A DNA stretch of 64,000 bases from the sequence record NC_031126.1; one strand, given 5' to 3'. Positions 1-32,760 of this stretch are shown here, in pieces (position 1 is the stretch's first letter; each line of letters starts with the position of its first letter). The notes beneath the pieces were generated by a model. The model did not search any database. It worked only from the letters and a program-made list of their open reading frames with translations, and was not told the origin of the DNA. The translations under genes and the position numbers were made by a program.

Positions 1-870
1 TTGTTTACGCATGCCGAACTTGTCACGATGCTGTTAACCGGCACCGGGGCGAAGTTAGTCAGTGGAACCGAGGGCTGGTATAAGTTCTTTTATCAGGGCA
101 CTATCATTTATCTACCGGTCACGCCGGTGGCAAACACCATCAGTTGGAGTCTGCTTTACGGGGCAGGTATCGTTTATGGTGTTGATGGGGTCGGGACCTA
201 TCCGATGTCGCCTGCGGTTAATCAAGGCAAAATCTTAACAAAAGATACAGCCAGTGACGGGCGTATTTATCTTCGACCAAAACTACCCACCGCCAGCAAG
301 AATGACCCTATGACAACAGCCACTGGGACACTTCCAATAGCGGACACTGCTGGTAGCGTTCTTGATTTGATGTTGAAGGTTCGTGATGGTACCTGGGAAA
401 GCAACTCGTACAGCGATTGGTCGCAATGGGTGCAGATGCGCAATAGCGTGCAGGGGCAGACGCAGAACAACAAACTGATTACGATGTTGGGGCAAAGCGC
501 TACTAACGTCAACAAAACTACAGCGGGCGCGGGGTATTACTGGTGGCCTGTCTTAGAGTTAGTTGACAAAAATGGCACCACTTTAGGATTGGAAGAGCTT
601 CGGGGTAACGTTGATCGTACTCTGACACCTATCACCTTTACGCCACAACTGACGCTACAAATTGCGCCGATTGCGATGACTAACGCAAAGACCGTTGAGT
701 ATTCACCGATACTCTTTGGTACCGAAAACAGTCTAGCGATATCACCGACTGCGTTTGCGTTACCGAAAACGGTTGACTTCACGCCAATCACCTTCTCCGC
801 AGAAATCTATACCCCACCTGCTAAACCATCGTTATCGACAATGAATGGTGAATTAGACGGGTTCAAATAG
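1..870 (+). CDS. Virion/receptor-binding protein, class A of triplet 1 (5'-truncated by window edge)
   Basis: Open from base 1. WYKFFYQGTIIYLP, W..LYGAGIVYG and WWPVLEL motifs shared with downstream paralogues; ends LSTMNGELDGFK. Confidence 0.8.
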   Translation: MFTHAELVTMLLTGTGAKLVSGTEGWYKFFYQGTIIYLPVTPVANTISWSLLYGAGIVYGVDGVGTYPMSPAVNQGKILTKDTASDGRIYLRPKLPTASKNDPMTTATGTLPIADTAGSVLDLMLKVRDGTWESNSYSDWSQWVQMRNSVQGQTQNNKLITMLGQSATNVNKTTAGAGYYWWPVLELVDKNGTTLGLEELRGNVDRTLTPITFTPQLTLQIAPIAMTNAKTVEYSPILFGTENSLAISPTAFALPKTVDFTPITFSAEIYTPPAKPSLSTMNGELDGFK

Positions 871-881
871 AGGTATTCATC

Positions 882-1877
882 ATGTCATTTACATTGCGTT
901 GGAAGAACCCAAACGTAATCTCCACGGTGGTCAACATTTACCGTGATACCAAAGATATTTTAGTCACTGCTCTACCTGCCCCTATCGCAACACTGACTAA
1001 CGGCGAAACTGAGTGGCGGGATAATACAGCCTTACCGGGCGGAACCTACTGGTATTTAGCCACTGTGACCGCCAATGGGAAGACGGTAGCCACGTCTAGT
1101 CAGAAGTACGTCATTGAGGTCAAGCGCGGCATCGGGCCTATGAACTTCTTGTATGGCGATGACCGTCTGGGATTCTTAGGGCAAGTGCCTTATGAGGAGT
1201 TGTGGTCACCGCAACAGATGCCTGCTGGGTTCTTGTCAATGTTCCCCAATTTACTGACCGACCGTGTGGCGGTATATAAGTTTTCCCGCAACGGGAAAAT
1301 GTTGTACCTTATGTCAAACCCTAGCCAGTTCCCTGGATTTGCTAACTGGTCTTCGCTGTACCAAGCAGGTCTCGTATACGGTACAGACGACTTTGGGCCT
1401 GCGGGTGGACATGGTACACTACCCGATACCAAACAAGACGCGAAGATTATTCACAACGGTGATACCTACCGTATGCGTCTCGTTCGTGGTATCACTTCGG
1501 TAGGCACGCCTGCTGCCTTCCCGTTTAACGATGCGTATAACGCGAAAGATCATGATGCTGTGTCAGAGCTAACGGGTTCTTGCGAATTCAATGATCTGTT
1601 CTACACCCTTGTCGATCCCGTCCCCAATAAACAGCGTTGGGGAAACTGGAATGCCCTCAGTTATACCTACATCGGTCGCAGCGACATCGCCGCAAACCAA
1701 CCCTACTACTTAGGTGGTACGCTGTGTATGGAACATGATACCGTGGGTGATAGAGTTCTGCATCGTGGTATTTTTAGTACATCGTCAGCACAACCGGTGT
1801 CTGTTATTCAACGCATCAATTATGTTTCGCCATCTCAACAAGGCCGTTATTTGCCTGTGTTTGAATTGGTTGAATAA
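882..1877 (+). CDS. Virion/receptor-binding protein, class B of triplet 1
   Basis: RBS GAGGT. N-terminal MSFTLRWKNPN Fn3/Ig-like beta domain, GIGP linker, shared family domain ending YLPVFELVE. Confidence 0.8.
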   Translation: MSFTLRWKNPNVISTVVNIYRDTKDILVTALPAPIATLTNGETEWRDNTALPGGTYWYLATVTANGKTVATSSQKYVIEVKRGIGPMNFLYGDDRLGFLGQVPYEELWSPQQMPAGFLSMFPNLLTDRVAVYKFSRNGKMLYLMSNPSQFPGFANWSSLYQAGLVYGTDDFGPAGGHGTLPDTKQDAKIIHNGDTYRMRLVRGITSVGTPAAFPFNDAYNAKDHDAVSELTGSCEFNDLFYTLVDPVPNKQRWGNWNALSYTYIGRSDIAANQPYYLGGTLCMEHDTVGDRVLHRGIFSTSSAQPVSVIQRINYVSPSQQGRYLPVFELVE

Positions 1878-1886
1878 GGAGCGGTC

Positions 1887-2816
1887 ATGACCATTCGTTT
1901 AAGTTGGCCGACGCAGGTTGACAAAGCATTAACAGGCATTGAGATTTATCGGAAAACGGGGTGGGATGCAACGATTGATGTATACAATCCAGGCGTCCCA
2001 CTTGCCACGTTGGCGGGAAACGCTACTGAGTTTGTAGAGAATGTTGCTAACCTGACTTCGAAAACGATTTACAAATATTGGGTAGCGGCAGTAAAAGGCA
2101 CCGAACGTCTGTTCAGTCAGCCGATTACTCAAGGGTTCTATTTAGACACTGGACCTGGCCCACAAACGTTAAAGCGGGGTGATTGGTACGCGGGTTATTT
2201 CGGTACGCTGACGAATGCTGAGTTTTTTAACACTACAGAAATCAAGCAATTACTTCCCGCAGCACGCGGAAATTTATTCCAGTACGACCCGCAGCTTTGG
2301 TATAAGTTTGTTTATAAAGGCCGAATTATTTTTGTTCCGAGTAGTCGCCATGCGACAGGCTACAGTTTTATTAATGCGTACGCGCAGGGGATGGCTTACG
2401 GTACGGATGATAACGGCGTGATTGTCCCATCCGGTGCCGCCGCTACGAAGCAAGACGCCAAGATTAGCAAAGACGGGCGCACCTATCGCATTAGACTGCC
2501 GTATGCATTAGACTACGCTGCCGCAATCGGTAGCAGCGGTGACTACAACAGCGGCGAATGGCGTAACACCATGGGTAGAATGTTTACCGGGGCGTCTGCT
2601 AACTTTCCTTTGCAAGGTATAGCGTCCTGGGATTCGTTGGCGCTCCTGGGTAGCACCTCGGCTATAAATGATGCGGGGGCTGTAGCGGTGGTACCGATGT
2701 ATACGCAAGGCACGAATCTTTACGCATATGGGTATAGTCCAATGGCCTTTAACACGAATAATAATGTGGGTAGCGCCATGTCGATGTGGTTTGTCTTTGA
2801 ATTAATTTTACCGTAA
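1887..2816 (+). CDS. Virion/receptor-binding protein, class C of triplet 1
   Basis: RBS AGGAG. MTIRLSW..Q...IEIYR N-terminus, TGPGP..L.RGDW..GYFG linker, ends WFVFELILP. Confidence 0.8.
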   Translation: MTIRLSWPTQVDKALTGIEIYRKTGWDATIDVYNPGVPLATLAGNATEFVENVANLTSKTIYKYWVAAVKGTERLFSQPITQGFYLDTGPGPQTLKRGDWYAGYFGTLTNAEFFNTTEIKQLLPAARGNLFQYDPQLWYKFVYKGRIIFVPSSRHATGYSFINAYAQGMAYGTDDNGVIVPSGAAATKQDAKISKDGRTYRIRLPYALDYAAAIGSSGDYNSGEWRNTMGRMFTGASANFPLQGIASWDSLALLGSTSAINDAGAVAVVPMYTQGTNLYAYGYSPMAFNTNNNVGSAMSMWFVFELILP

Positions 2817-2828
2817 TGGAGTAATGCC

Positions 2829-4271
2829 ATGGGGTTGTATACAGAACCTTCGATGGAACTGCTCTGCCAACAAGTTGTCCGTGACAATCCCGAATTAGCA
2901 GGACGGATCACCGCTGGCTCTATTGGGGTCAGGGGTGTTCCTACTGCGAAGACCATTAATGGTCGAAACACGCAAATTACGTTGGTAGGGAAACCCGGCA
3001 AAGGGTTCGCTGGGGAAATAACAGTCTATTACGACCGTTTAGCGTTAACGAATCTTTATAACGCACCGTTGACGCTTTATGTTCCAAAAGAGAAAACAAA
3101 GGTTGCTGACCTTTTACCGTTGTTACGGGATTACTACGGTATTGCGTTGGACATCAATGAAATCACTGTCCCCTCTCAAAACATTAAGCCGCTGGCGACA
3201 TTGATGCCGTTGGTTATCACGGCCTCTAACAGCCCATGCTACACCGGAACGTTAACGGTTAATTACGCAGCGCAACCGTATGGCTATTTCCCAGACAGTG
3301 GTCCGGGTAGTAAACAGCTGTTAGCGGGCGATGAGGTGTATGGGTATTTTGGAGTGGTTGAGCAAAAAGACTTTGCTACCGCCACCGACTTATACACCAC
3401 AGCATTCCCTGGTGTGGATAAGTCCACCATTGAGCAAACCAACTTCACCTGGCGAAAGTTCTTCATGAACGGCAACGTCGTCTATTTACCGTCGGGGAAG
3501 GTAGGGACAACGTCGTGGGCCGGATTGTACGCAGCTGGGGCGGTGTACGGCGACGACACGACCGGAACGCCACCCTCTGGCACCACACCTGTGGTACAGA
3601 CGCTCTATTACAGTAAAACTGAAAACGGAAACACGTCGTATTTCAATTTACGTATTCCGAGTGACGGTGGTCGTGGGGAAGATGTTCCGTTAGGATTATT
3701 GGCGCGTCTGGGGAACGGTAATGATGCGGGTGTATGGGGTAAGGATACCGAGATACGTTACACCGAACAGGTTATCTTCAGTGCGCTGAGTGGCGCAAAG
3801 AACCTGGTAGGCAATCTTATCGGTAGCGGTGGTGCGTGGATTGACACCTGGACATCGTCGGGCTGGTTCCCTATTGTCGAGATGCTAGACAAATCGAACA
3901 TGGTGCTCCCCCTCGCAGATATCGAAGGTGAAGTTGTTTGGGCCTGTCGTCCGCTTGTGCCTACGCACAATGACGTTCCCGAAACCATACACCCATTAGA
4001 AATCCAAAGTGCGACCACCCCACTGCCAATACCGGTCTCAGTAAGTAGTAAGCAAGGTACACCACTGATGCACCCTATTCAACTACAAGAGCCTACGGTT
4101 GATATCGTAAGGCCGATAGTTGCTGGGGCCCGCACCTACTACGTGGCTATTCCTATCCAGTTGCAAGAGCCGCATGTTATCGCACCACGTCCTTTAGTGG
4201 CAACGCGCGGAGAACCTCTGATGAAATATGATATTGCGACCGCCAGCGGTGAGTTGGATGGTTTTCAATAA
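2829..4271 (+). CDS. Virion/receptor-binding protein, class A of triplet 2
   Basis: MGLY..P.ELLC...RDNP N-terminal anchor domain with RN..ITL.G...G...YYDR, PDSGPGSK linker, family domain, Pro-rich tail, ends ASGELDGFQ. Confidence 0.85.
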   Translation: MGLYTEPSMELLCQQVVRDNPELAGRITAGSIGVRGVPTAKTINGRNTQITLVGKPGKGFAGEITVYYDRLALTNLYNAPLTLYVPKEKTKVADLLPLLRDYYGIALDINEITVPSQNIKPLATLMPLVITASNSPCYTGTLTVNYAAQPYGYFPDSGPGSKQLLAGDEVYGYFGVVEQKDFATATDLYTTAFPGVDKSTIEQTNFTWRKFFMNGNVVYLPSGKVGTTSWAGLYAAGAVYGDDTTGTPPSGTTPVVQTLYYSKTENGNTSYFNLRIPSDGGRGEDVPLGLLARLGNGNDAGVWGKDTEIRYTEQVIFSALSGAKNLVGNLIGSGGAWIDTWTSSGWFPIVEMLDKSNMVLPLADIEGEVVWACRPLVPTHNDVPETIHPLEIQSATTPLPIPVSVSSKQGTPLMHPIQLQEPTVDIVRPIVAGARTYYVAIPIQLQEPHVIAPRPLVATRGEPLMKYDIATASGELDGFQ

Positions 4272-4281
4272 GGAGTAAGAC

Positions 4282-5271
4282 ATGGCATTTACACTACGTT
4301 GGAAAAACGATAACCCTGCCGGGTCTGTGGTGAAGGTCTATCGCGGAACTGCAAAGCTGGTACCAACGTCATTACCCGAACCCTTGGCAGTCTTGTCTAA
4401 TGGGGAAGAAACCTTTACGGATACCACCGTGGTATTGAATACAGGATATTACTACCTGTTAACCGTAACGGTGGGAAGTCGGACTGTTACGGGGCCGCAA
4501 AAATACATCGTCATTAAAAACCGACGCGGTATCGGCCCGATTGATTTGAAACAGGCGGGCGATACAGACGACTTAGCCTACTTGGGTGGAATGGATTACG
4601 TAGAACAGTTTACGTATAACGCTTTACCTGCGGGCTTACGTGCCCTCACCGGTTTTAGTGGGGATGGTGGGCTGAATATGTTTAAGTTCCTGCACCGTGG
4701 GCGTATACTGTATACGTTCCCTTACGGACGTTTCCACAATAAACTCATTTCGTGGAATGATATCTATAATGCCGGTTTGATGTATGGCATGGATGGGTTT
4801 GGGCCGGAAGGTGGGCATCCCGGTTTACCGGATATCGACCAGGGTGGGTTGTTTGATTGGCAGGGTGACACTTACCGCGTTCGCAGTCTACGTGGTTTGA
4901 CGGACGTGGGAGAACCTACGCTTTTGACCCTGCCTGATAGTCTACATGGTGTTGACCACGACACAACCGAATACGGTCGCTGTGAGTACAATGACCTCCT
5001 GTACCCGTTCTGCGATTGGATGCCTGATAAGCAACCTAATGCTAATTGGGGTTACGTCATGACCTACTCGTTCTTCAATTACGCAACGACGTGGACTGGC
5101 GCAGGTTTCCTTTGTCAGGAACGCGACCCAGACTCTGGTAAGGTATTGATGCGTGGCTCCGCACCTGCAACTTCGCCAGCCAATGCAAAAATCGACCTGA
5201 CGATGATCAAATTGATTGACCCCGCCGCAGCCGCAGGGTATTTCGTTCCTGTGATTGAGCTAATGGAGTAA
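4282..5271 (+). CDS. Virion/receptor-binding protein, class B of triplet 2
   Basis: MAFTLRWKNDN N-terminus, GIGP linker, ends FVPVIELME; paralogue of 882..1877. Confidence 0.8.
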   Translation: MAFTLRWKNDNPAGSVVKVYRGTAKLVPTSLPEPLAVLSNGEETFTDTTVVLNTGYYYLLTVTVGSRTVTGPQKYIVIKNRRGIGPIDLKQAGDTDDLAYLGGMDYVEQFTYNALPAGLRALTGFSGDGGLNMFKFLHRGRILYTFPYGRFHNKLISWNDIYNAGLMYGMDGFGPEGGHPGLPDIDQGGLFDWQGDTYRVRSLRGLTDVGEPTLLTLPDSLHGVDHDTTEYGRCEYNDLLYPFCDWMPDKQPNANWGYVMTYSFFNYATTWTGAGFLCQERDPDSGKVLMRGSAPATSPANAKIDLTMIKLIDPAAAAGYFVPVIELME

Positions 5272-5274
5272 GTC

Positions 5275-6174
5275 ATGTCAATTGTATTGAATTGGAAACA
5301 GCAACCAGGGCAGACGCTAGATTCAATCGAAATTTACCGTTACAACCCGAAAGATACACCGAACCCAACATCGCCAGGCACGCCGTTGGTTGTGTTGCCA
5401 GGCACGGCTACGTCGTACGAGGATACCTCGGTAGCGAACTTTAAGACATACCAGTACCGCATCGTGTCTGTAAAGGGCACAGACAAGGTAATGGGTTTCC
5501 CTATCATGCAGGGATTCTTCCCTTATACCGGACCAGGCCCTCAGGAGCTGATTCGCGGTGACTGGAACTGTGGCTACTTTGGATCACTGAAGAACACCGA
5601 GTTCTTCTTAGGTGCAGCGGAAATCAATGCGTTGGCGGGCGTTGCTATCTGGAACCAGAGCCCAGTATTGTTCCATAAGTTCATTTGGCATGACCGTATC
5701 CTGTTTATCCCGGATACTAACACGCACTCCAGTATAACCTGGCAACAGTGTTACTTATACGGCATTGTGTGGGGTACGGACGACTTCGGGTATGCCCCGA
5801 CATCTACCGCTAACGTGAATCAACGCCGGACGGTGATTAAAGACGGGTACGAGTATGTTGTGCGTTTACCGCGTATTGCGGATTATGGTTACACGGCAAG
5901 CTCTTCGCTCAGCTCCGCTTCGTTTCTCCGGGATGGTGAGTGGCACAATACCTTTTTGAGGTTATTCCACCAGAATGGGCTAATGCCACGTTTCGATGAC
6001 CAAGATCCGAAAACGGGAAATACCTATTTAACCCCCGGTTCGACATGGCTTGCAAACGCCTTTAACGCATCGAACCCTTACTACCACCGGCCAGATTACC
6101 CCGATTCTGTAACGTATTCAAGTTACAACAATAGCGGTATGTGCACAACGATATTAGAACTGGTGCTTAACTAA
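5275..6174 (+). CDS. Virion/receptor-binding protein, class C of triplet 2
   Basis: MSIVLNWKQQ...IEIYR, TGPGPQELIRGDWNCGYFG, ends ILELVLN. Confidence 0.8.
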   Translation: MSIVLNWKQQPGQTLDSIEIYRYNPKDTPNPTSPGTPLVVLPGTATSYEDTSVANFKTYQYRIVSVKGTDKVMGFPIMQGFFPYTGPGPQELIRGDWNCGYFGSLKNTEFFLGAAEINALAGVAIWNQSPVLFHKFIWHDRILFIPDTNTHSSITWQQCYLYGIVWGTDDFGYAPTSTANVNQRRTVIKDGYEYVVRLPRIADYGYTASSSLSSASFLRDGEWHNTFLRLFHQNGLMPRFDDQDPKTGNTYLTPGSTWLANAFNASNPYYHRPDYPDSVTYSSYNNSGMCTTILELVLN

Positions 6175-6185
6175 TAGGAGACAAC

Positions 6186-7577
6186 ATGGGGTTATACAGC
6201 CAACCGCCGCTAGAATTACTCTGTCGGCTCATTATGCGTGATAATCCCCATATCGCAATACCCCTCGACCCTACCAAGGTCATGGTGTTGAGCGGGCCGC
6301 TGACAACCGGGCTCGGTACTAGCGGGCGTAATGCCCGCGTTACCTTAAACGGCAAAACAGGGTCGGGGATTGTTGGCAGGAAAGAATTCTTTTACGATAG
6401 AATCAACGTAGGCTCACTGTTCAATGGAATTAATGTTATCTTTGAGGCCGAAGGCGGCTCGACCAAAGTTTCTGACCTGCTACCTGCTTTAAAAGAACAA
6501 TACGGTATTCAGTTGTCTGCGGATGATTTGTCTAACGGCAACACCGACTTAGGCTATGCTTATACCCCAACACCGGTCACATTTAACATTGCATCGACAA
6601 GCCTGGCGTACACAGGAACCCTCACCGCAACGTGGACACGTAAACCGGTAGGGATTTTCCCAGATTCGGGGCCGGGCTCCAAGAAGATGTTAATCGGTGA
6701 TATCAATAACGGTTACTTCGGGGTGGTCAGTCAGGCTGAGTTGTTCCCAACGGTTCGGCTGTACAATGCCTTGAAAGGCGACCTCGGCTCTACGTTCGTG
6801 GCCGCTATTGATAATGCCCACTATTGGTTCAAGTTTGCTTTGGATGGTGAGTATTACTTCTTCCCAAGCGCCAACATATTTGGCGGTGTTTCTTGGGCAG
6901 CTCTGAATACCGCAGGGTATGCTAAAGCGAATGCAAAGTTCCCTGTTGTTTTAGATACAGGCGATGGTAAGCGTTTCTTCCAAATGCGTTTACCGAAGAT
7001 GGGCAACGACGATCCCATGGATGCGCTACGTGGTGAAGCAAATAGTGACGCGGCGCGGTTGTTCAACAAAATCCATGCTGGCGCTTACGGTACCAGTGCC
7101 TGGGATAATAAGACCCCGGATGTTCTCGGTGTCTTCTGGTGGCTGAACCACCGTAAGTTGGATGGAAACTTAACTTCTGTCTTTGTTACCTCCATGAACC
7201 AGCAGTCAATCAGCAGCGGTCCGGAAACCAATAACAACAGTTGGCGGCCGATGTTGAAGGTAATAGATGGTCGATTAATTGCCGTGCCCATGCAGGATAT
7301 CACCGGTGTTGCCGTAGGGCGTATCAGAGCGCCCGTACTGACGATTGACCGCGAACCCGACCCGTTACAACCGAAGCGGGTATTGGACGTCACTGGGACC
7401 TTCTTGCGGTCTTTCCCTAAACCGTTCTTAAAAGAACCAGGGTACAATTACGTTCTCGCGGTTCGAAGCATCGTCCCAAGTCGTTCAGTAAAAAGCTTCC
7501 CTGTCACTATCACTGTCACAGTTGACACCCGTATTCCGTTAGCCACCGCCGATGGCGAACTGAGTGGATTTCGCTAG
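6186..7577 (+). CDS. Virion/receptor-binding protein, class A of triplet 3
   Basis: MGLYSQPPLELLC..IMRDNP, PDSGPGSKK, WRPMLKV, ends ADGELSGFR. Confidence 0.85.
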   Translation: MGLYSQPPLELLCRLIMRDNPHIAIPLDPTKVMVLSGPLTTGLGTSGRNARVTLNGKTGSGIVGRKEFFYDRINVGSLFNGINVIFEAEGGSTKVSDLLPALKEQYGIQLSADDLSNGNTDLGYAYTPTPVTFNIASTSLAYTGTLTATWTRKPVGIFPDSGPGSKKMLIGDINNGYFGVVSQAELFPTVRLYNALKGDLGSTFVAAIDNAHYWFKFALDGEYYFFPSANIFGGVSWAALNTAGYAKANAKFPVVLDTGDGKRFFQMRLPKMGNDDPMDALRGEANSDAARLFNKIHAGAYGTSAWDNKTPDVLGVFWWLNHRKLDGNLTSVFVTSMNQQSISSGPETNNNSWRPMLKVIDGRLIAVPMQDITGVAVGRIRAPVLTIDREPDPLQPKRVLDVTGTFLRSFPKPFLKEPGYNYVLAVRSIVPSRSVKSFPVTITVTVDTRIPLATADGELSGFR

Positions 7578-7588
7578 GAGATAACACC

Positions 7589-8626
7589 ATGGCATTAAAA
7601 CTTACCTGGGCTAACCCGAATGTGGTGGCCAACAGTATTGCTATTTATCGCGGGGATGCGGAATTGAATCCTGCGGCGTTACCGACGCCGCTTGTTGTGT
7701 TGACTAACGGTGAAACCACCTGGACTGACGCAACCGCCGACTACGGGAAAACGTTCTATTACATTCTCGGTACCCGGACAGCAAACGACGAAGTGTTGAC
7801 GGCTAGTCAAAAAATCCTGGTGGCGGATAATCGGGGTATTGGGCCATCGATATTAAAGTTCGGTGATGATAACCTGGGTTATTACGGCACCGTGTTAAGT
7901 TCGGACTTCGTAGGCTTCCCTGACCTACAGGCCGTTGCAGCGGTAACGATGTCCACATTAACCTGGAACCCAGTTTGGCACAAGTTCGTGCGTAACGGTA
8001 AAATCATCTATGTACCGGACGGTGTTCCGCCAGATTTTTACACCTGGCAACAGATCTATCAGTTCGGGTTTATGTATGGTATCGATGCGAACTACCCACC
8101 GGGTTTAACGTTAACGGGTTTAACTCCCACCAATCAAAACCGCATCATTGACTTCAAAGGTCAAAAATACCGTGTCCGCACGATTCGCGGCTGGAGTGAT
8201 GATCCAGTCAGCCAGTATGTGTCAACGGTCGTTAATGGCACCGAAAGTGATGCCGCAGCTCTAGCGATAAAGAATAATGAATTCAGTGACTTCATCTATG
8301 CGTTAATGACATATGTTCCACTGAAACAGCGTACTGAAAACTATGTCGAAACCGCAGACCCTGGCCTGTACGTGGGTGGGGCAATGAACGCTGGGTTTAA
8401 CCAGGATACTCAAATCCTGGAGATGAACCGTGGTCGTGTGTTGTGCCAAGAACGTGACACGGGTGGGGTAACCGCAAACATGCTGACGCGCGGGCTACGG
8501 CCTGTGGGTTATTCCTCAGTACCGGGTTGGACGAAAGCGAACCTGACGTATATTCAAAGCCGTCCCGCGAACGTCCAAGCACGTTGGCTCCCGGTGTTAG
8601 AACTCATTGATAGCGTTGCTCTTTAA
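7589..8626 (+). CDS. Virion/receptor-binding protein, class B of triplet 3
   Basis: MALKLTWANPN, GIGPSILKFGD, WHKFVRNGK, WLPVLEL. Confidence 0.8.
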   Translation: MALKLTWANPNVVANSIAIYRGDAELNPAALPTPLVVLTNGETTWTDATADYGKTFYYILGTRTANDEVLTASQKILVADNRGIGPSILKFGDDNLGYYGTVLSSDFVGFPDLQAVAAVTMSTLTWNPVWHKFVRNGKIIYVPDGVPPDFYTWQQIYQFGFMYGIDANYPPGLTLTGLTPTNQNRIIDFKGQKYRVRTIRGWSDDPVSQYVSTVVNGTESDAAALAIKNNEFSDFIYALMTYVPLKQRTENYVETADPGLYVGGAMNAGFNQDTQILEMNRGRVLCQERDTGGVTANMLTRGLRPVGYSSVPGWTKANLTYIQSRPANVQARWLPVLELIDSVAL

Positions 8627-8635
8627 GGAATCATT

Positions 8636-9520
8636 ATGGGCGTAAAATTAAACTGGGACTTGCAAGTGACCCAGAATCTGGATGCGATTGAAATCTATCG
8701 AAGCAATACACCGGTAGACTCTTCTAACCCAGGTTCGCCACTGGTGTCCCTCCCCGGCACTGCAACGCAGTTCGAAGACGTCACGGTCAAGAACAAAAAC
8801 CTCTATTACTACCGTATCGCTGCCCGCAAAGGCACGGAGCGTGGTTGGGGTGAAAACCAGCTAACGGGTTACTTCTCCGAAACTGGCCCTGGGCGTGCGT
8901 ACCCGTTACGCGGTGATTGGAATGCTGGGCTGATGGATATTATCCCACAGGCAAGCCTTATCACCCTGTCGGATTTCTTTGCGAAGCTGCCCCAACTAAC
9001 CAAATTCGGGGCTGTCTCCGGGAGCGTTACCAGCTGGTACAAAACCTGTCACAAAGGGAAAGTTATCTTTGTGCCAAGTGGGCCGATGCTGACAGCATCC
9101 TGGAGTGAGCTGTATGGTGCCAAAGCTATTTACGGTGAAGAAAGTTCAGTGCAGTTACCGAACGGTACTTTAGCCAGTGGTAAGCTGACGGTTGACATAA
9201 ACGGTTTGACATACATTGTACGTTGTCCAAAACTGTCCCCGGTTCCGTACTCCACGTACCTAACGACACAAGACCAAACACTCAACAGTGAGTGGCGCGA
9301 TACGGTATCGCGTTTGTGCTTGTTATCCACTGAACCGCAAGCCGGTGCTAAGTCACGGTTGTTTGACTTAGGCTCTGCACCAACGACCGTTTTGGGTGGC
9401 CACATTCAGACCACCGTTAACTGTTCAGCGATGTTGCCTGCTGCACCTGGTGCTTTATCCTACGGTGCAATGGCTACTCGTTATTCTGTCGGGCTTGTGC
9501 TCGAACTTGTTATGCCTTAA
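8636..9520 (+). CDS. Virion/receptor-binding protein, class C of triplet 3
   Basis: MGVKLNWDLQ...IEIYRS, TGPG...LRGDW, ends LVLELVMP. Confidence 0.8.
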   Translation: MGVKLNWDLQVTQNLDAIEIYRSNTPVDSSNPGSPLVSLPGTATQFEDVTVKNKNLYYYRIAARKGTERGWGENQLTGYFSETGPGRAYPLRGDWNAGLMDIIPQASLITLSDFFAKLPQLTKFGAVSGSVTSWYKTCHKGKVIFVPSGPMLTASWSELYGAKAIYGEESSVQLPNGTLASGKLTVDINGLTYIVRCPKLSPVPYSTYLTTQDQTLNSEWRDTVSRLCLLSTEPQAGAKSRLFDLGSAPTTVLGGHIQTTVNCSAMLPAAPGALSYGAMATRYSVGLVLELVMP

Positions 9521-9531
9521 AGGAGAAAAAC

Positions 9532-11061
9532 ATGGGGCTTTACAGCAAGACGTCACTGGATATGTTGTGCCAGTTAATCAAGCGGGATAATCCCCAGTTC
9601 ACCAATCCTCTCGATGCGCAAAGCATTATGGTGCTAAGTGGTCCGCTTACATCAGGTTTAGGTGCAAGCGGGCGCAACGCCCGCATTACATTAAACGGAC
9701 GAACGGGTACAGGGATAGTACAGAAAAAAGAATTCTTTTACGACCGGATTAATATCGGGACGTTGTTTAACGGTATTACGGTTGTATTTGATGCAGCAGG
9801 AAGTTCTAAGACAATAGCGGATTTGCTCCCCGCGCTCAATGAGCAATATGGTTTATCTTTAGAGGCGACAGACCTCAGTAACGGGACGACTGCGCTCAGT
9901 TACGGATACGAACCATCACAGGTTACACTTAACATCGCTGGCACCTCGGTAGCATATACCGGGAGTCTAACTGTAACCTGGTCACGTAAACCGGTGGGAA
10001 TATATCCCGACTCCGGCCCTGGTAGTAAAGTGTTGTTAATAGGAACGTTGGATGAAGGTTACTTTGGTTTAGTACCAGAGACCGAGCTTTTCAGTGCACC
10101 CACGTTGCATTCAAAAATCAACGAGGGAATGGCCACACCAGCAGGAACATTGTCAGCACAGCCTGCAACGCGGCAGTGGTATAAGTTTGCACGGGATGGA
10201 AAAATACTCTACCTTGCAAACTACAACCACATTACCATCCGATGGCAGGAATTGTACGCGCGTGGTGCGGTCTATGAAACAGACCAACCTGCCGACAAAC
10301 AATTCCCATCTGATGCGGTAATAGTCGCGCAGAAACCCGTCATTCGAAAGGTTGAGTCTGGACGTGAATGGTATTTATCACCGTGTATGCCCCGACTATC
10401 GTCAACGTTCCCTTGGGATTATACGGCACCTAACGTTACCCCTGACCCCACAGGAGACGTGGCAAGACTGTTTGCTAGGATTGTAAAATCGGGCGGGTTT
10501 GCTACCGGGGAATGGGATGGGCAGACTATCGACGGTGGCGGGTTCTGGTTTTCCACTACGTCTGGTAACGATCCAACAAAGGCATTCGGTAGCAGCATGA
10601 CGGGGCTTCAACAGAACGTTTATGACAAAGCCAGTTTTAATGGCGGCTGGAGACCAATGCTGGAATTGGTGGACTTAGATAAGGTGGCGGTACCGTTAGA
10701 GAACTTTATTGGTACCCCAGACGGCGTTTTACGTAAACCGTTATTCACCATCGACCCAGACACCGGTGATGTTTTACTGGTTGTCTCGACGGTAAGTTGG
10801 GAAATACTCGGTACGTTAGATAAACCGCTCTTTACGCCAGTCGTTGACGCGCCCTCTGGAGTCGCAGAAGTCACTTGGCTCCGCCCCACCGAAACACGGG
10901 CGGTACTCGCCCAGCTCCATACCGATCCTCCGTTAAATGTAACGCAGGCAATCGGGAGTACACTATTACGAGTTCCTGTCGTTCAGATTACATCTGATTA
11001 CAAGGAAGTGGTAGCATTTAATCTATCCACTGCTAACGGCGAACTCGACGGCTTTAAATAA
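9532..11061 (+). CDS. Virion/receptor-binding protein, class A of triplet 4
   Basis: N-terminal ~165 aa visibly highly similar to 6186..7577 (SGPLT.GLG.SGRNAR.TLNG, KEFFYDRIN.G.LFNGI); GWRPMLEL; ends ANGELDGFK. Confidence 0.85.
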   Translation: MGLYSKTSLDMLCQLIKRDNPQFTNPLDAQSIMVLSGPLTSGLGASGRNARITLNGRTGTGIVQKKEFFYDRINIGTLFNGITVVFDAAGSSKTIADLLPALNEQYGLSLEATDLSNGTTALSYGYEPSQVTLNIAGTSVAYTGSLTVTWSRKPVGIYPDSGPGSKVLLIGTLDEGYFGLVPETELFSAPTLHSKINEGMATPAGTLSAQPATRQWYKFARDGKILYLANYNHITIRWQELYARGAVYETDQPADKQFPSDAVIVAQKPVIRKVESGREWYLSPCMPRLSSTFPWDYTAPNVTPDPTGDVARLFARIVKSGGFATGEWDGQTIDGGGFWFSTTSGNDPTKAFGSSMTGLQQNVYDKASFNGGWRPMLELVDLDKVAVPLENFIGTPDGVLRKPLFTIDPDTGDVLLVVSTVSWEILGTLDKPLFTPVVDAPSGVAEVTWLRPTETRAVLAQLHTDPPLNVTQAIGSTLLRVPVVQITSDYKEVVAFNLSTANGELDGFK

Positions 11062-11073
11062 GAGGACTTACTC

Positions 11074-12054
11074 ATGGCCTTAAAACTTAAATGGAAAAAT
11101 CCTAACAAGGGAAACACGACGGTTGATATTTATCGTGGTGATACACCCGCCGTGGATTTAACCACACCCTTGGTCACACTCACCGAGGGTGAGTTAGAAT
11201 GGGTAGACACCACCGCATTGTTTGGTAAGACGTATTACTACGTGTGGGCGGTCAACACCCACAACGACCGGGTCGTTAGTCAGCCCCAGAAAATTGAGGT
11301 TAACGATCGTAAAGGGCCAGGCCCTAACTTGCTGAAACACGGCAATGAATCTTACGGTTATTTCGGTAGCTTACCTGCCGCAGATTTCGTTAATAGCTCA
11401 ACTATTCTATCCGCTTTAAAATCAACATCCGGTATACCGCCCGGACCGTTCTATCCAACGTGGTATAAATTTATCCGTAATGGTAAAGTCCTTTTTGTAC
11501 CGAGCATTTGTTTCGGTGATGTTACTTGGACAAACCTGTATAACGCCGGTGGTGTTTACGGTACGGACGATATGGGCGGGATCAATTCCCCAGGAACGGT
11601 CAATCAACTTTCTACATTCGAATTGAACGGGGATTTATTCCTGGTGCGATTGGCGAAAGGGGTACCCGATGGGATGGAGTGGGCGGGCGATGTCGTAAAC
11701 TTAAATACGTTACCTGAAGCGCAAGGTATTTATTCGGAGTATGAAGATTTATTCTATCCGTTAATTCCACAATCACCAACACGCCAACGTATGGTGACAG
11801 TCGAAGGTGTTAACCCAACCGGCGTCATTCCAAGTGGTACGTATGGCAACCGTACCGCCATCGGTGTATTCGTGCAGGAGGCGCAGGGAACAGCTAACGC
11901 TTTACAGCGTGGTCAGGGAACGTATAACTACGACAACCACAGCCGAGGAACCGTAGAGGCTTTTGCCCTGCGTGGGCGTACTTCTTCTTCGGTCTGGTGG
12001 CCGGTTATTGAATACATTGGACGTGTCAATGAAGTCACGTTAGGGGGACTGTGA
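11074..12054 (+). CDS. Virion/receptor-binding protein, class B of triplet 4
   Basis: MALKLKWKNPN, GPGPNLLKHG, WYKFIRNGK, WWPVIEY. Confidence 0.8.
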   Translation: MALKLKWKNPNKGNTTVDIYRGDTPAVDLTTPLVTLTEGELEWVDTTALFGKTYYYVWAVNTHNDRVVSQPQKIEVNDRKGPGPNLLKHGNESYGYFGSLPAADFVNSSTILSALKSTSGIPPGPFYPTWYKFIRNGKVLFVPSICFGDVTWTNLYNAGGVYGTDDMGGINSPGTVNQLSTFELNGDLFLVRLAKGVPDGMEWAGDVVNLNTLPEAQGIYSEYEDLFYPLIPQSPTRQRMVTVEGVNPTGVIPSGTYGNRTAIGVFVQEAQGTANALQRGQGTYNYDNHSRGTVEAFALRGRTSSSVWWPVIEYIGRVNEVTLGGL

Positions 12055-12956
12055 TGGGCATTAAGTTAAAATGGGACGACCAAGCCGATCAACAATTGGA
12101 CGCTATTGAGATTTATCGTAGTGATACCCAAATTGACGAAAACAATCCTGGCACACCCATTGTGGTATTGGGGGGTGATGCGGTGGAGTGGGAAGACGAT
12201 AGCGTACGTATCGGAAATACCTACTACTACAGCATTGCGGTGGTGAAGGGAAGCAATCGCTCATTCGCGGCTAATCAAACACAAGGTTACTATTCCAATC
12301 TCGGCCCTGGCCCGTCCAAGGTAATTCGTGGGGATTGGGTGCGGGGCTACTTCGGTGAGATAACACCAACCGAATGGGCAACCGTCACGGATATCACGGA
12401 TAAAATTAAAGCCAAGCTGAAAAGTGTTGTTGGTATCACGTTGGCCACAAACACGTCCGATATCTGGTATAAGTTTGTCTATAAAGGCAAGATTCTGCTT
12501 ATTCCTAATCGACAACTTATCACCAGTAGTAACTGGCAGAATGGTTATAACGCGGGTTTCATTTATGGTACAGATGATTTCGGTAAAACCCCGGAGGGTG
12601 ATGCCGGTAATGTTAATCAGTTAACTGTAATTGAAGTGGGGGGTTATCAGTTTATTGCCCGTGCCATTCGTTTAAGTGATAAACCAACCACGGAATATCT
12701 GACTGCCGCTGCTGATTTCAACGACAGCGAATGGAAAAGTACCTACGCGCGTTTACGTAACGATGCCGCGGCGTTGACTGACCCGACGATACAGCCGCGT
12801 GTCTCTGACCTAGGCTCTATTAACGGGACGGGTAGTGCACATATGGCGGACGCAACAAAACTCGCCACCGTGTCGAACACTGCACCTGAGGTTTTGACTA
12901 GCGCTGTGAAAACCGCATCCATTAACTGGATGGTAGTGTTGGAATTGATACCGTAA
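12051..12956 (+). CDS. Virion/receptor-binding protein, class C of triplet 4
   Basis: MGIKLKWDDQ...IEIYRS, LGPGPSKVIRGDW; start overlaps the previous stop (GTGATG); ends VVLELIP. Confidence 0.8.
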   Translation: MMGIKLKWDDQADQQLDAIEIYRSDTQIDENNPGTPIVVLGGDAVEWEDDSVRIGNTYYYSIAVVKGSNRSFAANQTQGYYSNLGPGPSKVIRGDWVRGYFGEITPTEWATVTDITDKIKAKLKSVVGITLATNTSDIWYKFVYKGKILLIPNRQLITSSNWQNGYNAGFIYGTDDFGKTPEGDAGNVNQLTVIEVGGYQFIARAIRLSDKPTTEYLTAAADFNDSEWKSTYARLRNDAAALTDPTIQPRVSDLGSINGTGSAHMADATKLATVSNTAPEVLTSAVKTASINWMVVLELIP

Positions 12957-13008
12957 ACAAAAAAGAAAAGGCTCTACACCCCAGAAGGAGTGTAGAGGTC
13001 TTTTTTAT
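12957..13008. terminator. Bidirectional intrinsic terminator
   Basis: Stem CTCTACACC(C)C-AGAA-GGAGTGTAGAG flanked by A-tract and T-tract, between convergent genes. Confidence 0.8.
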
Positions 13009-13475
13009 TTGACGAGTGATTCGCCTGAGTCGGGTGCAAGTACACACTGCAAGAACGTCATTCCGATACCATCTCCGGTGTTTGGATTCACCGTGGATGT
13101 GGAGAAGACCGGGGCTCTAGCACCGAGGGCATGTATTCGGTAGTAACGCGCCCCTGTAGACAAATCAACGGCACCATCAATCTTACCCAACAGGTCTTTA
13201 TAGAGCTGAGGTGATTCGACTTTGCCGTCTGGGTAAGTGGCTACCCAACCCGCACCATTATCAATGACCGTAGCCGAATAGGGTTGTAACTGCAATGACC
13301 CCAACTGCGGTTGGAAGCGCGTGAAGTTTTCCTTCGTGGCGCTACACTGATAAATTGTGAAGGAAGTTGCTTCAACCGGAACTGTGCCAAATTGGCCAGA
13401 TTGATTTGGTGCAATTGCGCACCCTGCCAGCAGCGTAGACATCACGACTACCATCAGCATTAGACGTTTTAACAT
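13005..13475 (-). CDS. Putative lipoprotein (moron-like)
   Basis: Basic N-terminus, hydrophobic stretch, lipobox LAGC; RBS AGGA; antisense to the flanking structural genes. Confidence 0.75.
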   Translation of the reverse strand: MLKRLMLMVVVMSTLLAGCAIAPNQSGQFGTVPVEATSFTIYQCSATKENFTRFQPQLGSLQLQPYSATVIDNGAGWVATYPDGKVESPQLYKDLLGKIDGAVDLSTGARYYRIHALGARAPVFSTSTVNPNTGDGIGMTFLQCVLAPDSGESLVK

Positions 13476-13595: not shown

Positions 13596-14129
13596 ATGGC
13601 TATTGTTTCTGCCCAGACGCAACTCGTTGCTCTGTTTAATGCTAAGAACACCGGCCTCGCGCAAGCGCTGGCTGTTGCTGATGTGGACTTTGGCGCAGTT
13701 GCGGTTTACACCCCAGGCGATGGTGGTGATACCCGTAACTCCAAACTGACCATTACAGCGAAGGCTGGCTCTGAACACTTCTCCGGTGAGAAAGAGCTGC
13801 ACTATACCCGTCTCGCGGGTGCTGGATTGGTAGGCAACAAAGCGCTTACCGAAGACCAGGCTGACTGGGACACCGATGAAGAAGTGCTGGCCAAGTTCAA
13901 CGCTGACGTTATCGCTGCGGGTAAAACCGAAGATGCGTTTGTGGAGAGTGAACTGACCTTCACCCGCACTGACGGTCAAGACGGTGCGAAAGTTATCACT
14001 GTTGCGATCAAAGCAGGTCACATCAAATTCATCGAAGGTGATGCTGCTGTGTACACCATTACTCAAGAAGTCGTGAAGACTGACCTGAGCACCACCAATG
14101 GTGAGCTGGACGGCTTTACTACCTCTTAA
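13596..14129 (+). CDS. Virion structural protein (short anchor-domain paralogue)
   Basis: RBS GAGGT. Homologous to the class A N-terminus (L..LFN..N; RNS.LTITA; F.GEKELHYTR); ends LSTTNGELDGFTTS; codon use rich in GCT/GGT/CTG/ACC suggests high expression. Confidence 0.8.
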   Translation: MAIVSAQTQLVALFNAKNTGLAQALAVADVDFGAVAVYTPGDGGDTRNSKLTITAKAGSEHFSGEKELHYTRLAGAGLVGNKALTEDQADWDTDEEVLAKFNADVIAAGKTEDAFVESELTFTRTDGQDGAKVITVAIKAGHIKFIEGDAAVYTITQEVVKTDLSTTNGELDGFTTS

Positions 14130-14143
14130 TCGAGTAGGTACTA

Positions 14144-14175
14144 AGGGGGCCGAAAGGCTCCCTGTTTCTTTTTTT
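14144..14175 (+). terminator. Intrinsic terminator
   Basis: GGGGGCC-GAAA-GGCTCCC followed by a T-rich tract. Confidence 0.75.
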
Positions 14176-14201
14176 AATGACCACAACAAAGGAGAATAAT
14201 T

Positions 14202-14756
14202 GTGGCAATCGTAACAGCGCAACAACAACTATGTGATTTGTATAATGCCGCTAACCCAGAGTTACCACATCCGCTGACGCCAGAAGATGTTACTTTCGGT
14301 TCTCGTGGCCCGTACACCCCTGAAGATACAGAAGGTATGGAGTTTATCCCTAACTTCGCACTCAACCTGACTGCCTCTCCGGATAGCCCACATTTCCGTG
14401 AAGACATTACGGTTCATTACCGTCGTGTGCCTGTCGGATTTATTTCCGACGGCGGTGAAATGCCGGTCGAGGGTGCCGTTACGGACTGGAACAACGATGC
14501 CTTCGTTATTGATTATATCAACGAGCGATTGCAAGTGCAGTATCTCCGTGATGAGTTGACTGAAGACGACCTTATCATTGACCGTGCGAACAACAACGAC
14601 TCGACGGCACTGAATATTCTCGTCACACTGATGAACCACATCAAATTCGAAAATGTTGCTTTCACCCTCGCCCTCCCGCTGGAAGCAGAGAAGATTGATA
14701 TCTCTACTCTCGATGGCGAATTAAATGGTTTTGAATACACCCCGCCCGTAGTCTAA
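14202..14756 (+). CDS. Virion structural protein (short anchor-domain paralogue)
   Basis: GTG start after GGAG; MAIVTAQQQLCDLYNAANP paralogous to 13596; ends ISTLDGELNGFEYTPPVV. Confidence 0.75.
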   Translation: MAIVTAQQQLCDLYNAANPELPHPLTPEDVTFGSRGPYTPEDTEGMEFIPNFALNLTASPDSPHFREDITVHYRRVPVGFISDGGEMPVEGAVTDWNNDAFVIDYINERLQVQYLRDELTEDDLIIDRANNNDSTALNILVTLMNHIKFENVAFTLALPLEAEKIDISTLDGELNGFEYTPPVV

Positions 14757-14763
14757 ATTTGGA

Positions 14764-15282
14764 GTGCTTATGGCGCAGACATTGCAAGAGAAGTTCATTG
14801 ATTTAATCAATACAAAGAATCCCGGACTGAACCTTACATTGGCCGATGTTACCTTTGGTGACCCTGCGCCATATACGCCGAGCACCGAGGGCGATGCGCG
14901 CAATACTGTTTTGACATTGACAGCGAAACCTGAAAGTCCTGGATTCCGTGGCAGTAAAGAGTATCACTTTACACGTTTTAATCTGACCCATCCTAATGGG
15001 GAAGATGCGTATAGTTGGGCAGTCACTGACGTACATGAGCCTTGGCAGGATGATGCGTATGCGTTACAGCAATTCAACATGAACCTGCCAAACGATAAAC
15101 CTACGTTAGATGATGTAACCATCACCCGCTGGACGGTGCCGGAAGAACCAAACAACCTTTACGTGAAAATCAAACTTCACGACACGCTTTTAAAATGGTG
15201 GGGCTCGTTTGTTATTCAGGTCGAGGATGTAGGTAAACAGCAGTTGATGTTTGCCACAGGTGAGTTAGACGGCTTCAATTAA
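14764..15282 (+). CDS. Virion structural protein (short anchor-domain paralogue)
   Basis: Probable start ATG 14770. LIN.KNP, DVTFGDP.PYTP, RNTVLTLTA, F.GSKEYHFTR; ends ATGELDGFN. Confidence 0.75.
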   Translation: MLMAQTLQEKFIDLINTKNPGLNLTLADVTFGDPAPYTPSTEGDARNTVLTLTAKPESPGFRGSKEYHFTRFNLTHPNGEDAYSWAVTDVHEPWQDDAYALQQFNMNLPNDKPTLDDVTITRWTVPEEPNNLYVKIKLHDTLLKWWGSFVIQVEDVGKQQLMFATGELDGFN

Positions 15283-23516: not shown

Positions 23517-23549
23517 ACTCCCTTATCGGGACATCCCTGTCCCCATGAT

Positions 23550-28577: not shown

Positions 28578-28587
28578 TCCTGCTTTT

Positions 28588-28622
28588 AAATAAAAACGGA
28601 TACCGCCCCCGAAAGGGCGGTA
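28588..28622 (-). terminator. Intrinsic terminator
   Basis: Stem TACCGCCC/GGGCGGTA followed on the minus strand by CCGTTTTTATTT. Confidence 0.7.
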
Positions 28623-28657
28623 GCTTGCGGACTAAGCACGCCCGCAAGCGTGCCGTC

Positions 28658-32749: not shown

Positions 32750-32760
32750 TTATAGTCTCC

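What the first reader, a model, noticed from the sequence alone, without database searches (positions are those of the whole stretch)
1..12956. Four tandem A-B-C triplet cassettes of paralogous putative adhesins
Seen: twelve tightly packed genes repeat in strict order A (460-510 aa, MGLY..ELLC..RDNP start, GELDGF end), B (~330 aa, MA(L/F)xLxWxN(P)N) and C (~300 aa, MxIxLxWxxQ..IEIYR). All share one domain entered through a G(P/I)GP..L..GD...GY(F/L)G linker. Inference: the unit of duplication is the triplet, which suggests a heterotrimeric A:B:C module (A anchors; B and C add Fn3-like arms). Four divergent copies could give four receptor specificities.
Basis: partly seen in the sequence, partly recalled or inferred. 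Interest (0 to 1): 0.68.

Follow-up and report, generated by a model that had tools for sequence, protein, structure and literature searches.

The report
Triplet gene cassettes of phage-head binding proteins
A giant fire-blight phage carries four back-to-back copies of a three-gene set. It belongs to a known but unexplained family of low-copy phage-head proteins, and its members look like lectin-type binding modules on conserved anchors, not tail adhesins.

Summary
The window is Erwinia phage vB_EamM_ChrisDB, record positions 124001-188000. Twelve tightly packed + strand genes repeat as A-B-C four times, classes separate on a tree, and all share one about 200-260 aa domain.

The array is orthologous to Salmonella phage SPN3US gp145-153, part of the published 'paralog family B'. 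Mass spectrometry places every one of those proteins in tailless heads at low copy, not cleaved by the prohead protease. A tail-adhesin reading is therefore unlikely.

New here:
- B and C are an Fn3 domain plus the shared domain.
- A is the N-half of DUF7941 (fold match to phiKZ gp127), the shared domain, then a disordered repeat tail ending in a GELDGF tag.
- The shared domain resembles C-type-lectin-like folds only weakly. Its distal half is hypervariable.
- In other phages it is fused to GP38-adhesin, laminin-G and Kelch domains, or repeated up to 8 times in one chain.
- Relatives carry 1-4 triplets of four congruent types, so the triplet is the unit of gain and loss.

Best reading (about 0.5): low-copy, head-displayed binding modules. 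The A:B:C heterotrimer could not be tested because the complex predictor failed. The paralogy is already known; the triplet and domain anatomy appear unreported.

The parts
1..870 (+). A1, C-terminal 289 aa of ChrisDB gp162 (472 aa; the gene starts 548 nt upstream of the window). Contains the end of the shared domain, the repeat tail and the GELDGFK end.
882..1877 (+). B1 (331 aa): Fn3 plus shared lectin-like domain. Triplet type I.
1887..2816 (+). C1 (309 aa): Fn3 plus shared domain. Type I.
2829..4271 (+). A2 (480 aa): DUF7941 N-half (1-149), shared domain (about 157-353), repeat tail, GELDGFQ. Type II.
4282..5271 (+). B2 (329 aa). Type II.
5275..6174 (+). C2 (299 aa). Type II.
6186..7577 (+). 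A3 (463 aa). Type III. Ends GELSGFR.
7589..8626 (+). B3 (345 aa). Modelled at pLDDT 91: residues 1-80 are Fn3, about 83-340 the shared domain.
8636..9520 (+). C3 (294 aa). Type III.
9532..11061 (+). A4 (509 aa). In the model, 1-155 is the N-domain (matches phiKZ gp127, PDB 9xqd), 160-382 the shared domain, and 391-509 is disordered and ends GELDGFK.
11074..12054 (+). B4 (326 aa). Type IV.
12054..12956 (+). C4 (300 aa from the annotated ATG). Type IV. Last gene of the array.
12972..12997 (.). 11-bp-stem hairpin between the array and the convergent gene. Likely end of the transcription unit.
13596..14129 (+). mini-A (gp175, 177 aa): DUF7941 N-domain plus the same C-terminal tag. Ortholog of the abundant SPN3US head protein gp160.
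14202..14756 (+). mini-A (gp176, 184 aa): N-domain plus GELNGF tag.
14764..15282 (+). mini-A (gp177, about 170 aa): N-domain plus GELDGFN end.

Best explanation
The twelve genes encode low-copy virion proteins that travel with the phage head, or with its head-proximal neck, and not with the baseplate. Each protein has a conserved N-terminal docking module and a faster-evolving C-type-lectin-like domain whose distal half is hypervariable. In A the docking module is the N-half of DUF7941; in B and C it is an Fn3 domain. A also has a disordered tail of about 100 residues with roughly three short repeats, ending in a conserved K-x-DL-x-T-x-x-GELDGF tag that three small DUF7941-only proteins share.

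Shown here or in print: paralogy, class structure, en-bloc triplet duplication, cassette gain and loss among relatives, the Fn3 fold, the fold match of the A N-domain to phiKZ gp127, and head localisation and low copy of the SPN3US orthologs.

Inferred: the proteins sit on the outside of the capsid or neck and act as accessory ligand-binding modules, probably for glycans. That would give reversible adherence to the host envelope or exopolysaccharide, with A-B-C sets exchanged between phages as units. Whether A, B and C form one complex is open.
For: Identity and synteny:
- The window is ChrisDB.
- The SPN3US array is 7 DUF7941 genes, 3 triplets, then gp154/155. Gene numbering was checked against the paper's mutation coordinates.

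Location (PMC10052503 Tables S2 and S6; PMC5105663):
- gp145-153 are all assigned to the head, with head/WT ratios of 1.06-1.67.
- PSM per kDa is 1.2-4.4, against 3.9 for the 12-copy portal.
- None is cleaved by the prohead protease, unlike the internal proteins gp47, 50, 53 and 54.

Folds:
- Fn3: VIA Z 8.5, rmsd about 2 A over about 75 residues. A profile match to the Fn3 of Pectobacterium/Dickeya pectate lyases has E 1.5e-4.
- A4 residues 5-151 against phiKZ gp127: Foldseek E 4.6e-4, VIA Z 8.9.
- A4 residues 160-382: nearly all remaining top-50 rows are C-type-lectin-like folds or FGE-like enzymes built on it, Z 4-6.5.

Binding-module signature:
- N-domains are more conserved than the shared domain in 17 of 21 ortholog comparisons.
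- The second half of the shared domain is hypervariable.
- dN in the ABC genes reaches 0.38, among the highest in 40 kb.

Domain partners elsewhere:
- SPN3US gp155 is a head protein at the same locus. It combines the DUF7941 N-domain with Pfam GP38 tail-fibre adhesin, E 7e-18.
- Laminin_G_3, Kelch, DUF285, Big_9 and Flg_new fusions occur.
- 2-8 tandem copies occur in single chains, one of them in a chimallin-encoding contig.

Cassette behaviour: four congruent triplet types, present in different combinations in six phages.
Against: - No ChrisDB virion data exist in what I could reach. Location rests on orthology at 45-67% identity.
- The lectin-like assignment is weak: Z is at most 6.5, there is no Foldseek or sequence hit in the PDB, and no canonical C-type lectin motifs were identified.
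- An outside location is inferred and not shown. The SPN3US authors tentatively labelled the abundant family members 'head ejection?'.
- phiKZ gp83, which carries the shared domain, is absent from the 3.5 A icosahedral capsid model. That fits either flexible outer proteins or internal ones.
- phiKZ gp127 (DUF7941) was docked in the baseplate and SPN3US gp237 was reassigned to the tail. The anchor domain is therefore not specific to the head.
Confidence: 0.5

Rival explanations
1. They are internal head proteins, packaged with the DNA and perhaps ejected into the host, with no role in adhesion.
For: They are found in DNA-filled tailless heads. The SPN3US papers mark the abundant family members gp141, gp143 and gp160 as 'Head ejection?'. 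phiKZ gp83 is a head protein by mass spectrometry but is not among the ordered capsid proteins.
Against: None is processed by the prohead protease, whereas the internal and ejection proteins gp47, gp50, gp53 and gp54 are processed. Fn3 plus lectin-like architecture, fusions to GP38, LamG and Kelch domains, and the pattern of a conserved N-terminus with a variable C-terminus are typical of exposed binding proteins.
Confidence: 0.22
2. They are purely architectural minor capsid or neck proteins, such as cement or vertex or portal-proximal braces. Paralogs fill quasi-equivalent positions and there is no external ligand.
For: The DUF7941 fold acts as a structural connector in the phiKZ baseplate. 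Copy numbers near the portal's would fit symmetry-related special positions. The seven upstream DUF7941 paralogs are conserved one-to-one across genera.
Against: Triplet number varies from 1 to 4 among close relatives with the same capsid type, which is hard to square with fixed structural positions. The ABC genes are among the fastest-evolving in the region.
Confidence: 0.17
3. They are tail or baseplate adhesins (receptor-binding proteins), the usual meaning of a phage adhesin, which the first reader's word suggests.
For: phiKZ gp127 (DUF7941) sits in the outer baseplate. SPN3US family-B member gp237 is a tail protein. The array lies near a tail assembly chaperone and the giant fibre genes, and next to an EPS depolymerase in Machina and Kwan.
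Against: All nine SPN3US orthologs persist in two independent tailless mutants at ratios of 1 or more, while true baseplate and fibre proteins (gp168-170) drop to 0.004-0.013. ChrisDB has a separate fibre module at 22311-36453.
Confidence: 0.08

Closest known systems
SPN3US 'paralog family B' (gp138-154 plus gp83, gp160, gp237; Thomas et al. 2016, Ali et al. 2017, PMC5105663, PMC5694885, PMC10052503)
   Same: Orthologous and syntenic. Both have seven DUF7941 genes followed by A-B-C triplets. ChrisDB types I and II match SPN3US gp145-147 and gp151-153 at 45-67% identity. The family is described as the largest paralog family in a phage, with head location and unknown function.
   Different: ChrisDB has four triplets (types I-IV), and SPN3US has three (I, II, II') plus gp154/gp155. 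In the passages and tables I read, the papers treat the family as one group. I found no mention of the A/B/C periodicity, the Fn3 and lectin-like domains, or the C-terminal tag.
phiKZ gp127 (PDB 9XQD chain 0; structural atlas PMC13250141) and Pfam DUF7941
   Same: The A-class N-domain (residues about 5-151) has the same fold: Foldseek E 4.6e-4, VIA Z 8.9. It scores 79-97 bits against DUF7941, above the 27-bit cut-off.
   Different: gp127 is a full-length DUF7941 protein docked at 4.4-4.7 A in the outer baseplate. The A proteins keep only profile positions 1-155 of 276, and the SPN3US orthologs are in the head fraction.
T4 Hoc and other Ig/Fn3-bearing capsid decoration proteins
   Same: This is a working analogy. 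They are non-essential-looking capsid-borne proteins that expose Ig-like or Fn3 modules, are added without proteolytic processing, and are thought to give weak adherence to surfaces.
   Different: Hoc sits at every hexamer centre in about 155 copies and has no lectin-like domain. The SPN3US orthologs appear at roughly 4-14 copies. There is no sequence relation.
C-type-lectin-fold binding proteins of phages and bacteria (structural neighbours: Legionella Lcl C-terminal domain 8q4e, Treponema TvpA 2y3c, Bdellovibrio Bd2740 tip 8oks, Yersinia InvE 5n40)
   Same: They share the overall alpha/beta fold, with a conserved core and a variable loop region used for ligand binding.
   Different: The resemblance is weak (Z 4-6.5, 6-13% identity). 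There is no diversity-generating retroelement. Iyer et al. 2021 reported no FGS domains, the diversified C-type-lectin-fold family, in jumbo phages.
T2/T6-type Gp38 tail-fibre adhesin (Pfam PF05268)
   Same: In SPN3US and CR5 the same locus holds a DUF7941-anchored protein. In SPN3US gp155 it carries a GP38 domain, E 7e-18; CR5_144 is its counterpart by synteny, size and tree position. This shows that the locus displays adhesin-type modules.
   Different: ChrisDB has no GP38 domain. Its cassettes use the lectin-like domain instead.

Membership tests
SPN3US paralog family B | Detectable sequence homology to gp138-154 | tested here: met
   tblastn gives 45-67% identity for types I and II. They share phrog_3589 and phrog_1062.
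SPN3US paralog family B | Same genomic position and order | tested here: met
   Seven DUF7941 genes, then A-B-C triplets, then small DUF7941 genes, a tail assembly chaperone and an endolysin in both phages, the last group in a different order.
SPN3US paralog family B | Presence in purified virions, in the head fraction | not testable with these tools
   Shown only for SPN3US. No ChrisDB proteome was found.
Pfam DUF7941 (PF25613) | Score above the gathering threshold over the whole 276-position profile | tested here: inconclusive
   A2, A3 and A4 score 79-97 bits (cut-off 27) but cover only profile positions 1-155. B and C have no match.
Fibronectin type III domain | Seven-strand beta-sandwich superimposable on solved Fn3 domains | tested here: met
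   B3 residues 1-79: VIA Z 8.2-8.5, rmsd 1.9-2.5 A, 71-78 residues aligned. The profile hits the Fn3 of pectate lyases at E 1.5e-4. No Pfam fn3 hit at E up to 1.
C-type lectin-like domain superfold | Fold match clearly above background | tested here: inconclusive
   A4 residues 160-382: nearly all top-50 rows below the gp127 match are C-type-lectin-like folds or FGE-like enzymes built on that fold, but Z is only 4-6.5. Foldseek PDB finds nothing for the domain, and the sequence profile finds nothing.
C-type lectin-like domain superfold | Canonical Ca2+/sugar motifs (EPN/QPD, WND) and conserved disulfides | tested here: not met
   The conserved columns are G1, G3, G10, K50 and G109, with near-conserved G15, G18, F51, G55, W71, Y75, G78, R115, E149, G220 and E256. 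No such motifs or conserved cysteine pairs appear. Two proteins have no cysteine at all.
Phage tail receptor-binding protein | Part of the tail or baseplate | not testable with these tools
   Published ortholog data argue against it: head/WT ratio of 1.06 or more, against 0.013 or less for the fibre proteins.
Hoc-like hexamer decoration | One copy per hexamer centre (hundreds per capsid) | not testable with these tools
   Ortholog PSM per kDa is 1.2-4.4 against 3.9 for the portal, which suggests tens at most. The abundant members gp141 and gp160 are of other subtypes.

The most novel reading that the evidence does not exclude
Nucleus-forming jumbo phages carry on the head a second, modular host-recognition organ. 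A-proteins dock on the capsid through the DUF7941 N-domain and recruit cognate B and C through the repeat tail. This forms heteromeric lectin-like 'head adhesins' whose three-gene cassettes are swapped between phages to retune surface binding. In other chimalliviruses the same organ is one giant chain of up to eight such domains.
Probability: 0.2. Interest if true: 0.75.

Novelty: new member of a known kind. Interest (0 to 1): 0.5.

Why it matters
Paralog family B takes up about 9% of these 240-kb genomes (22 genes in ChrisDB). It has been called possibly the largest paralog family in any phage, and it has had no proposed function since 2016.

This analysis adds three things:
- A domain-level anatomy: docking module, variable lectin-like module and shared C-terminal tag.
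- The recognition that three-gene cassettes are the evolving unit.
- The link to adhesin-type fusions.

Together these turn 'unknown head proteins' into a testable hypothesis of capsid-borne binding modules. If it is right, host range and adsorption of chimalliviruses, including fire-blight biocontrol phages, would depend on more than the tail fibres. The shared domain, with more than 2000 clusters at 50% identity and no solved structure, is a worthwhile structural target.

Tried and rejected
There is no verdict on the heterotrimer.
- Pfam gave nothing significant for B or C.
- Foldseek against the PDB gave only Fn3 for B3. For A4 it gave only the gp127 match to the N-domain and nothing for the shared domain.
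- A profile of the shared domain against PDB sequences gave only noise.
- dN/dS between ChrisDB and pEa_SNUABM_8: dS is saturated in half the genes, so only dN was used.
- One-to-one pairing between the seven tag-bearing proteins and the seven upstream DUF7941 proteins is rejected. Tag counts are 7, 5, 4, 4, 3 and 2 in six phages, while the upstream set stays at 7 or 9.
- Strict co-divergence of cognate A, B and C is not supported. The mosaic blocks between ChrisDB and pEa_SNUABM_8 do not respect triplet borders: A3 is 60% identical, but B3 and C3 are 83-89%.
- pI and cysteine counts gave no clue to location.
- The sigma-70 promoter scan was below the shuffled expectation.
- Literature searches for DUF7941 or a reported triplet structure found nothing. 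The library is incomplete.
Full report
**Identity and observation**

The first 12,956 bases are 100% identical to Erwinia phage vB_EamM_ChrisDB (KX397366/NC_031126, Machinavirus), so the window is record positions 124001-188000. Twelve + strand ORFs fill positions 1-12956. Gaps between them are 3-12 nt, with one 1-nt overlap. The first ORF is cut by the window edge; the complete gene (gp162) is 472 aa.

All-vs-all BLASTP gives 105-329 bits within classes and 18-105 bits between them, at only 25-40% identity. The copies are real, ancient paralogs. A strong hairpin at 12972-12997 follows the last gene.

**The array is part of a larger family**

- Seven DUF7941 genes of 264-303 aa lie directly upstream of the window (ChrisDB gp155-161).
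- Three genes of about 175 aa lie downstream at 13596-15282. They consist of the DUF7941 N-domain plus the same C-terminal tag as the A proteins. An earlier scan note (s1-415449) pointed to the seven-fold tag, and I verified it.
- The whole genome holds 15 DUF7941 ORFs.
- The shared domain occurs only in the twelve A/B/C genes.

**Domain anatomy**

A model of B3 (pLDDT 91) shows two parts.
- Residues 1-80 form an Fn3 domain: VIA Z 8.5, rmsd about 2 A. A profile match to the Fn3 of Pectobacterium/Dickeya pectate lyases has E 1.5e-4.
- Residues about 83-340 form an alpha/beta domain with no Foldseek match in the PDB.

A model of A4 (pLDDT 77) shows three parts.
- Residues 1-155 match phiKZ gp127 in PDB 9XQD: Foldseek E 4.6e-4, VIA Z 8.9. 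This is the N-half of Pfam DUF7941.
- Residues 160-382 are the shared domain.
- Residues 391-509 are disordered.

With no Fn3 domain to dominate the list, nearly all the other top-50 VIA rows for A4 fall on the shared domain. They are C-type-lectin-like folds or FGE-like enzymes built on that fold (PvdO, EgtB, SenA), and include several bacterial adhesin tips. Z is only 4-6.5, so I treat this fold assignment as tentative.

In the alignment of the eleven in-window copies, the first half of the domain is conserved. The second half is hypervariable, with class-specific inserts.

The A tails contain about three imperfect repeats and end in K-x-DL-x-T-x-x-GELDGF.

**What is already known**

SPN3US has the same layout: seven DUF7941 genes, three A-B-C triplets, then gp154 and gp155. 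I checked the gene numbering against the mutation coordinates in the paper's Table S1. [quoted passage not shown]

PMC10052503 gives quantitative data.

| Protein(s) | Head/WT normalised PSM ratio |
|---|---|
| gp145-153 (the three triplets) | 1.06-1.67 |
| Major capsid protein | 1.39 |
| Fibre/baseplate proteins gp168-170 | 0.004-0.013 |

From the table values I calculate these PSM-per-kDa figures.

| Protein(s) | PSM per kDa |
|---|---|
| The nine triplet proteins | 1.2-4.4 |
| Portal (12 copies) | 3.9 |
| gp141 | 23 |
| gp160 | 31.5 |
| Capsid protein | 95 |

The triplet proteins are therefore low copy, very roughly 4-14 per virion. None of the family is cleaved by the prohead protease, unlike the internal and ejection proteins.

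**Conflicting cue**

phiKZ has only two relatives.
- gp83 combines the shared domain with a Kelch propeller and is annotated as a head protein.
- gp127 is a full DUF7941 protein. The 2026 phiKZ atlas docks it in the outer baseplate at 4.4-4.7 A (PMC13250141).

SPN3US family member gp237 was also reassigned to the tail. The docking domain is therefore used in both head and tail. For the triplets, however, the ortholog data say head.

**Evolution**

On a shared-domain tree of 43 proteins from five phages, the A, B and C labels need the minimum number of changes (3; shuffled mean 21.8). B is one clade at 99% support. In all three classes ChrisDB copies split as {1,2}|{3,4}, which indicates two rounds of en-bloc triplet duplication.

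Four triplet types can be traced across phages.

| Phage | Triplet content |
|---|---|
| ChrisDB and pEa_SNUABM_8 | I+II+III+IV |
| Machina | I+III+IV |
| SPN3US | I+II+II' plus gp154/155 |
| Kwan | I+II-like |
| CR5 | gp154/155-like pair plus one III/IV triplet |

- The seven upstream genes are conserved one-to-one, at 74-81% identity between ChrisDB and Machina. Triplet orthologs are 42-66% identical.
- Against pEa_SNUABM_8, dN in the triplets reaches 0.31-0.38, among the highest in 40 kb. The divergence is blockwise mosaic.
- N-terminal domains are more conserved than the shared domain in 17 of 21 ortholog comparisons. This is the pattern expected for an anchored binding protein.

**Wider family**

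A profile of the shared domain finds 2070 clusters at 50% identity, 1519 of them at E of 1e-10 or better. Architectures among the best 146 are as follows.

| Architecture | Count |
|---|---|
| Fn3 + domain | 79 |
| Single domain | 33 |
| Double domain | 19 |
| Triple domain | 7 |
| Fn3 + two domains | 2 |
| DUF7941 N-domain + domain | 2 |
| Fn3 + three domains | 1 |
| Four, five or eight tandem copies | 1 each |

- The eight-copy protein (2172 aa) lies beside a chimallin gene on a 210-kb contig.
- Fusion partners are Laminin_G_3, Kelch, DUF285, Gly_rich_2, Big_9 and Flg_new.
- SPN3US gp155 is a head protein at the same locus. It joins the DUF7941 N-domain to a Pfam GP38 tail-fibre adhesin domain at E 7e-18.
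- BFVD structural neighbours are all virion proteins of phiKZ-like phages.

These partners are typical of exposed binding proteins. The natural fusions also suggest that several copies of the domain work side by side.

**Reading**

The best-supported explanation is a set of low-copy, head- or neck-borne proteins that display variable lectin-like modules on conserved docking domains (about 0.5). Rivals are internal head proteins (0.22), purely architectural proteins (0.17) and tail adhesins (0.08).

The heterotrimer idea remains open. The only direct test available, complex prediction, was lost and then unavailable. Indirect hints are the fused multi-domain chains and the similar abundance of the nine SPN3US proteins. 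The mosaic blocks do not respect triplet borders, which weakens a strict cognate co-evolution argument.

**Novelty**

The paralogy and head location are published, so this is a new member of a known kind. I found no report of the triplet periodicity, the cassette types, the Fn3 and lectin-like architecture or the C-terminal tag. The paper library is incomplete.

Noticed in passing
window 13005-13475 (- strand): A 156-aa protein with a lipoprotein-type signal peptide ending in a LAGC lipobox (phrog_9559). It is convergent with the array and conserved in Machina, SPN3US and pEa_SNUABM_8.
   Followed up: partly
window 22311-36453 (- strand): Three giant paralogs (1675, 1363 and 1230 aa) plus a 401-aa relative share N-terminal regions (phrog_7449/8078/7557/2163). 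By synteny, size and shared N-terminal homology they look like the counterparts of SPN3US 'paralog family C' gp167-170, the real tail-fibre/baseplate module.
   Followed up: partly
L002:21170-23347 (SPN3US gp155) and L010:13821-15989 (CR5_144): A protein of about 725 aa at the same locus joins the DUF7941 N-domain to a T2-type GP38 tail-fibre adhesin domain (shown by Pfam for SPN3US gp155 only). SPN3US mass spectrometry nevertheless assigns gp155 to the head (ratio 0.89). CR5_144 ends in a DTLDGFKK variant of the tag.
   Followed up: partly
L009:1280-3082 (Machina) and L011:4413-6311 (Kwan): An EPS depolymerase gene sits immediately upstream of the seven DUF7941 genes in Machina and Kwan. It is absent at that place in ChrisDB, pEa_SNUABM_8 and SPN3US. 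The Machina protein matches phrog_4250 only from profile position 145, so it lacks the usual N-terminal anchor.
   Followed up: no
L014/L015:8001-14519 (metagenomic chimallivirus contigs): A 2172-aa protein carries eight tandem copies of the shared domain followed by a DUF285 domain. It lies one gene from the chimallin gene, which is on the opposite strand.
   Followed up: partly
L009:9341-10714 (Machina gp155, A of type I): This A protein stops 13-15 residues early and lacks the GELDGF tag that its ChrisDB, SPN3US and Kwan orthologs carry.
   Followed up: no
ChrisDB record 205784-206317 (- strand), outside the window: An isolated fifteenth DUF7941 ORF of 199 aa. It may be the counterpart of the tail-assigned SPN3US gp237.
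   Followed up: no
window 46187-48697 (+ strand): An 836-aa SbcC-like subunit of a palindrome-specific endonuclease (phrog_77).
   Followed up: no
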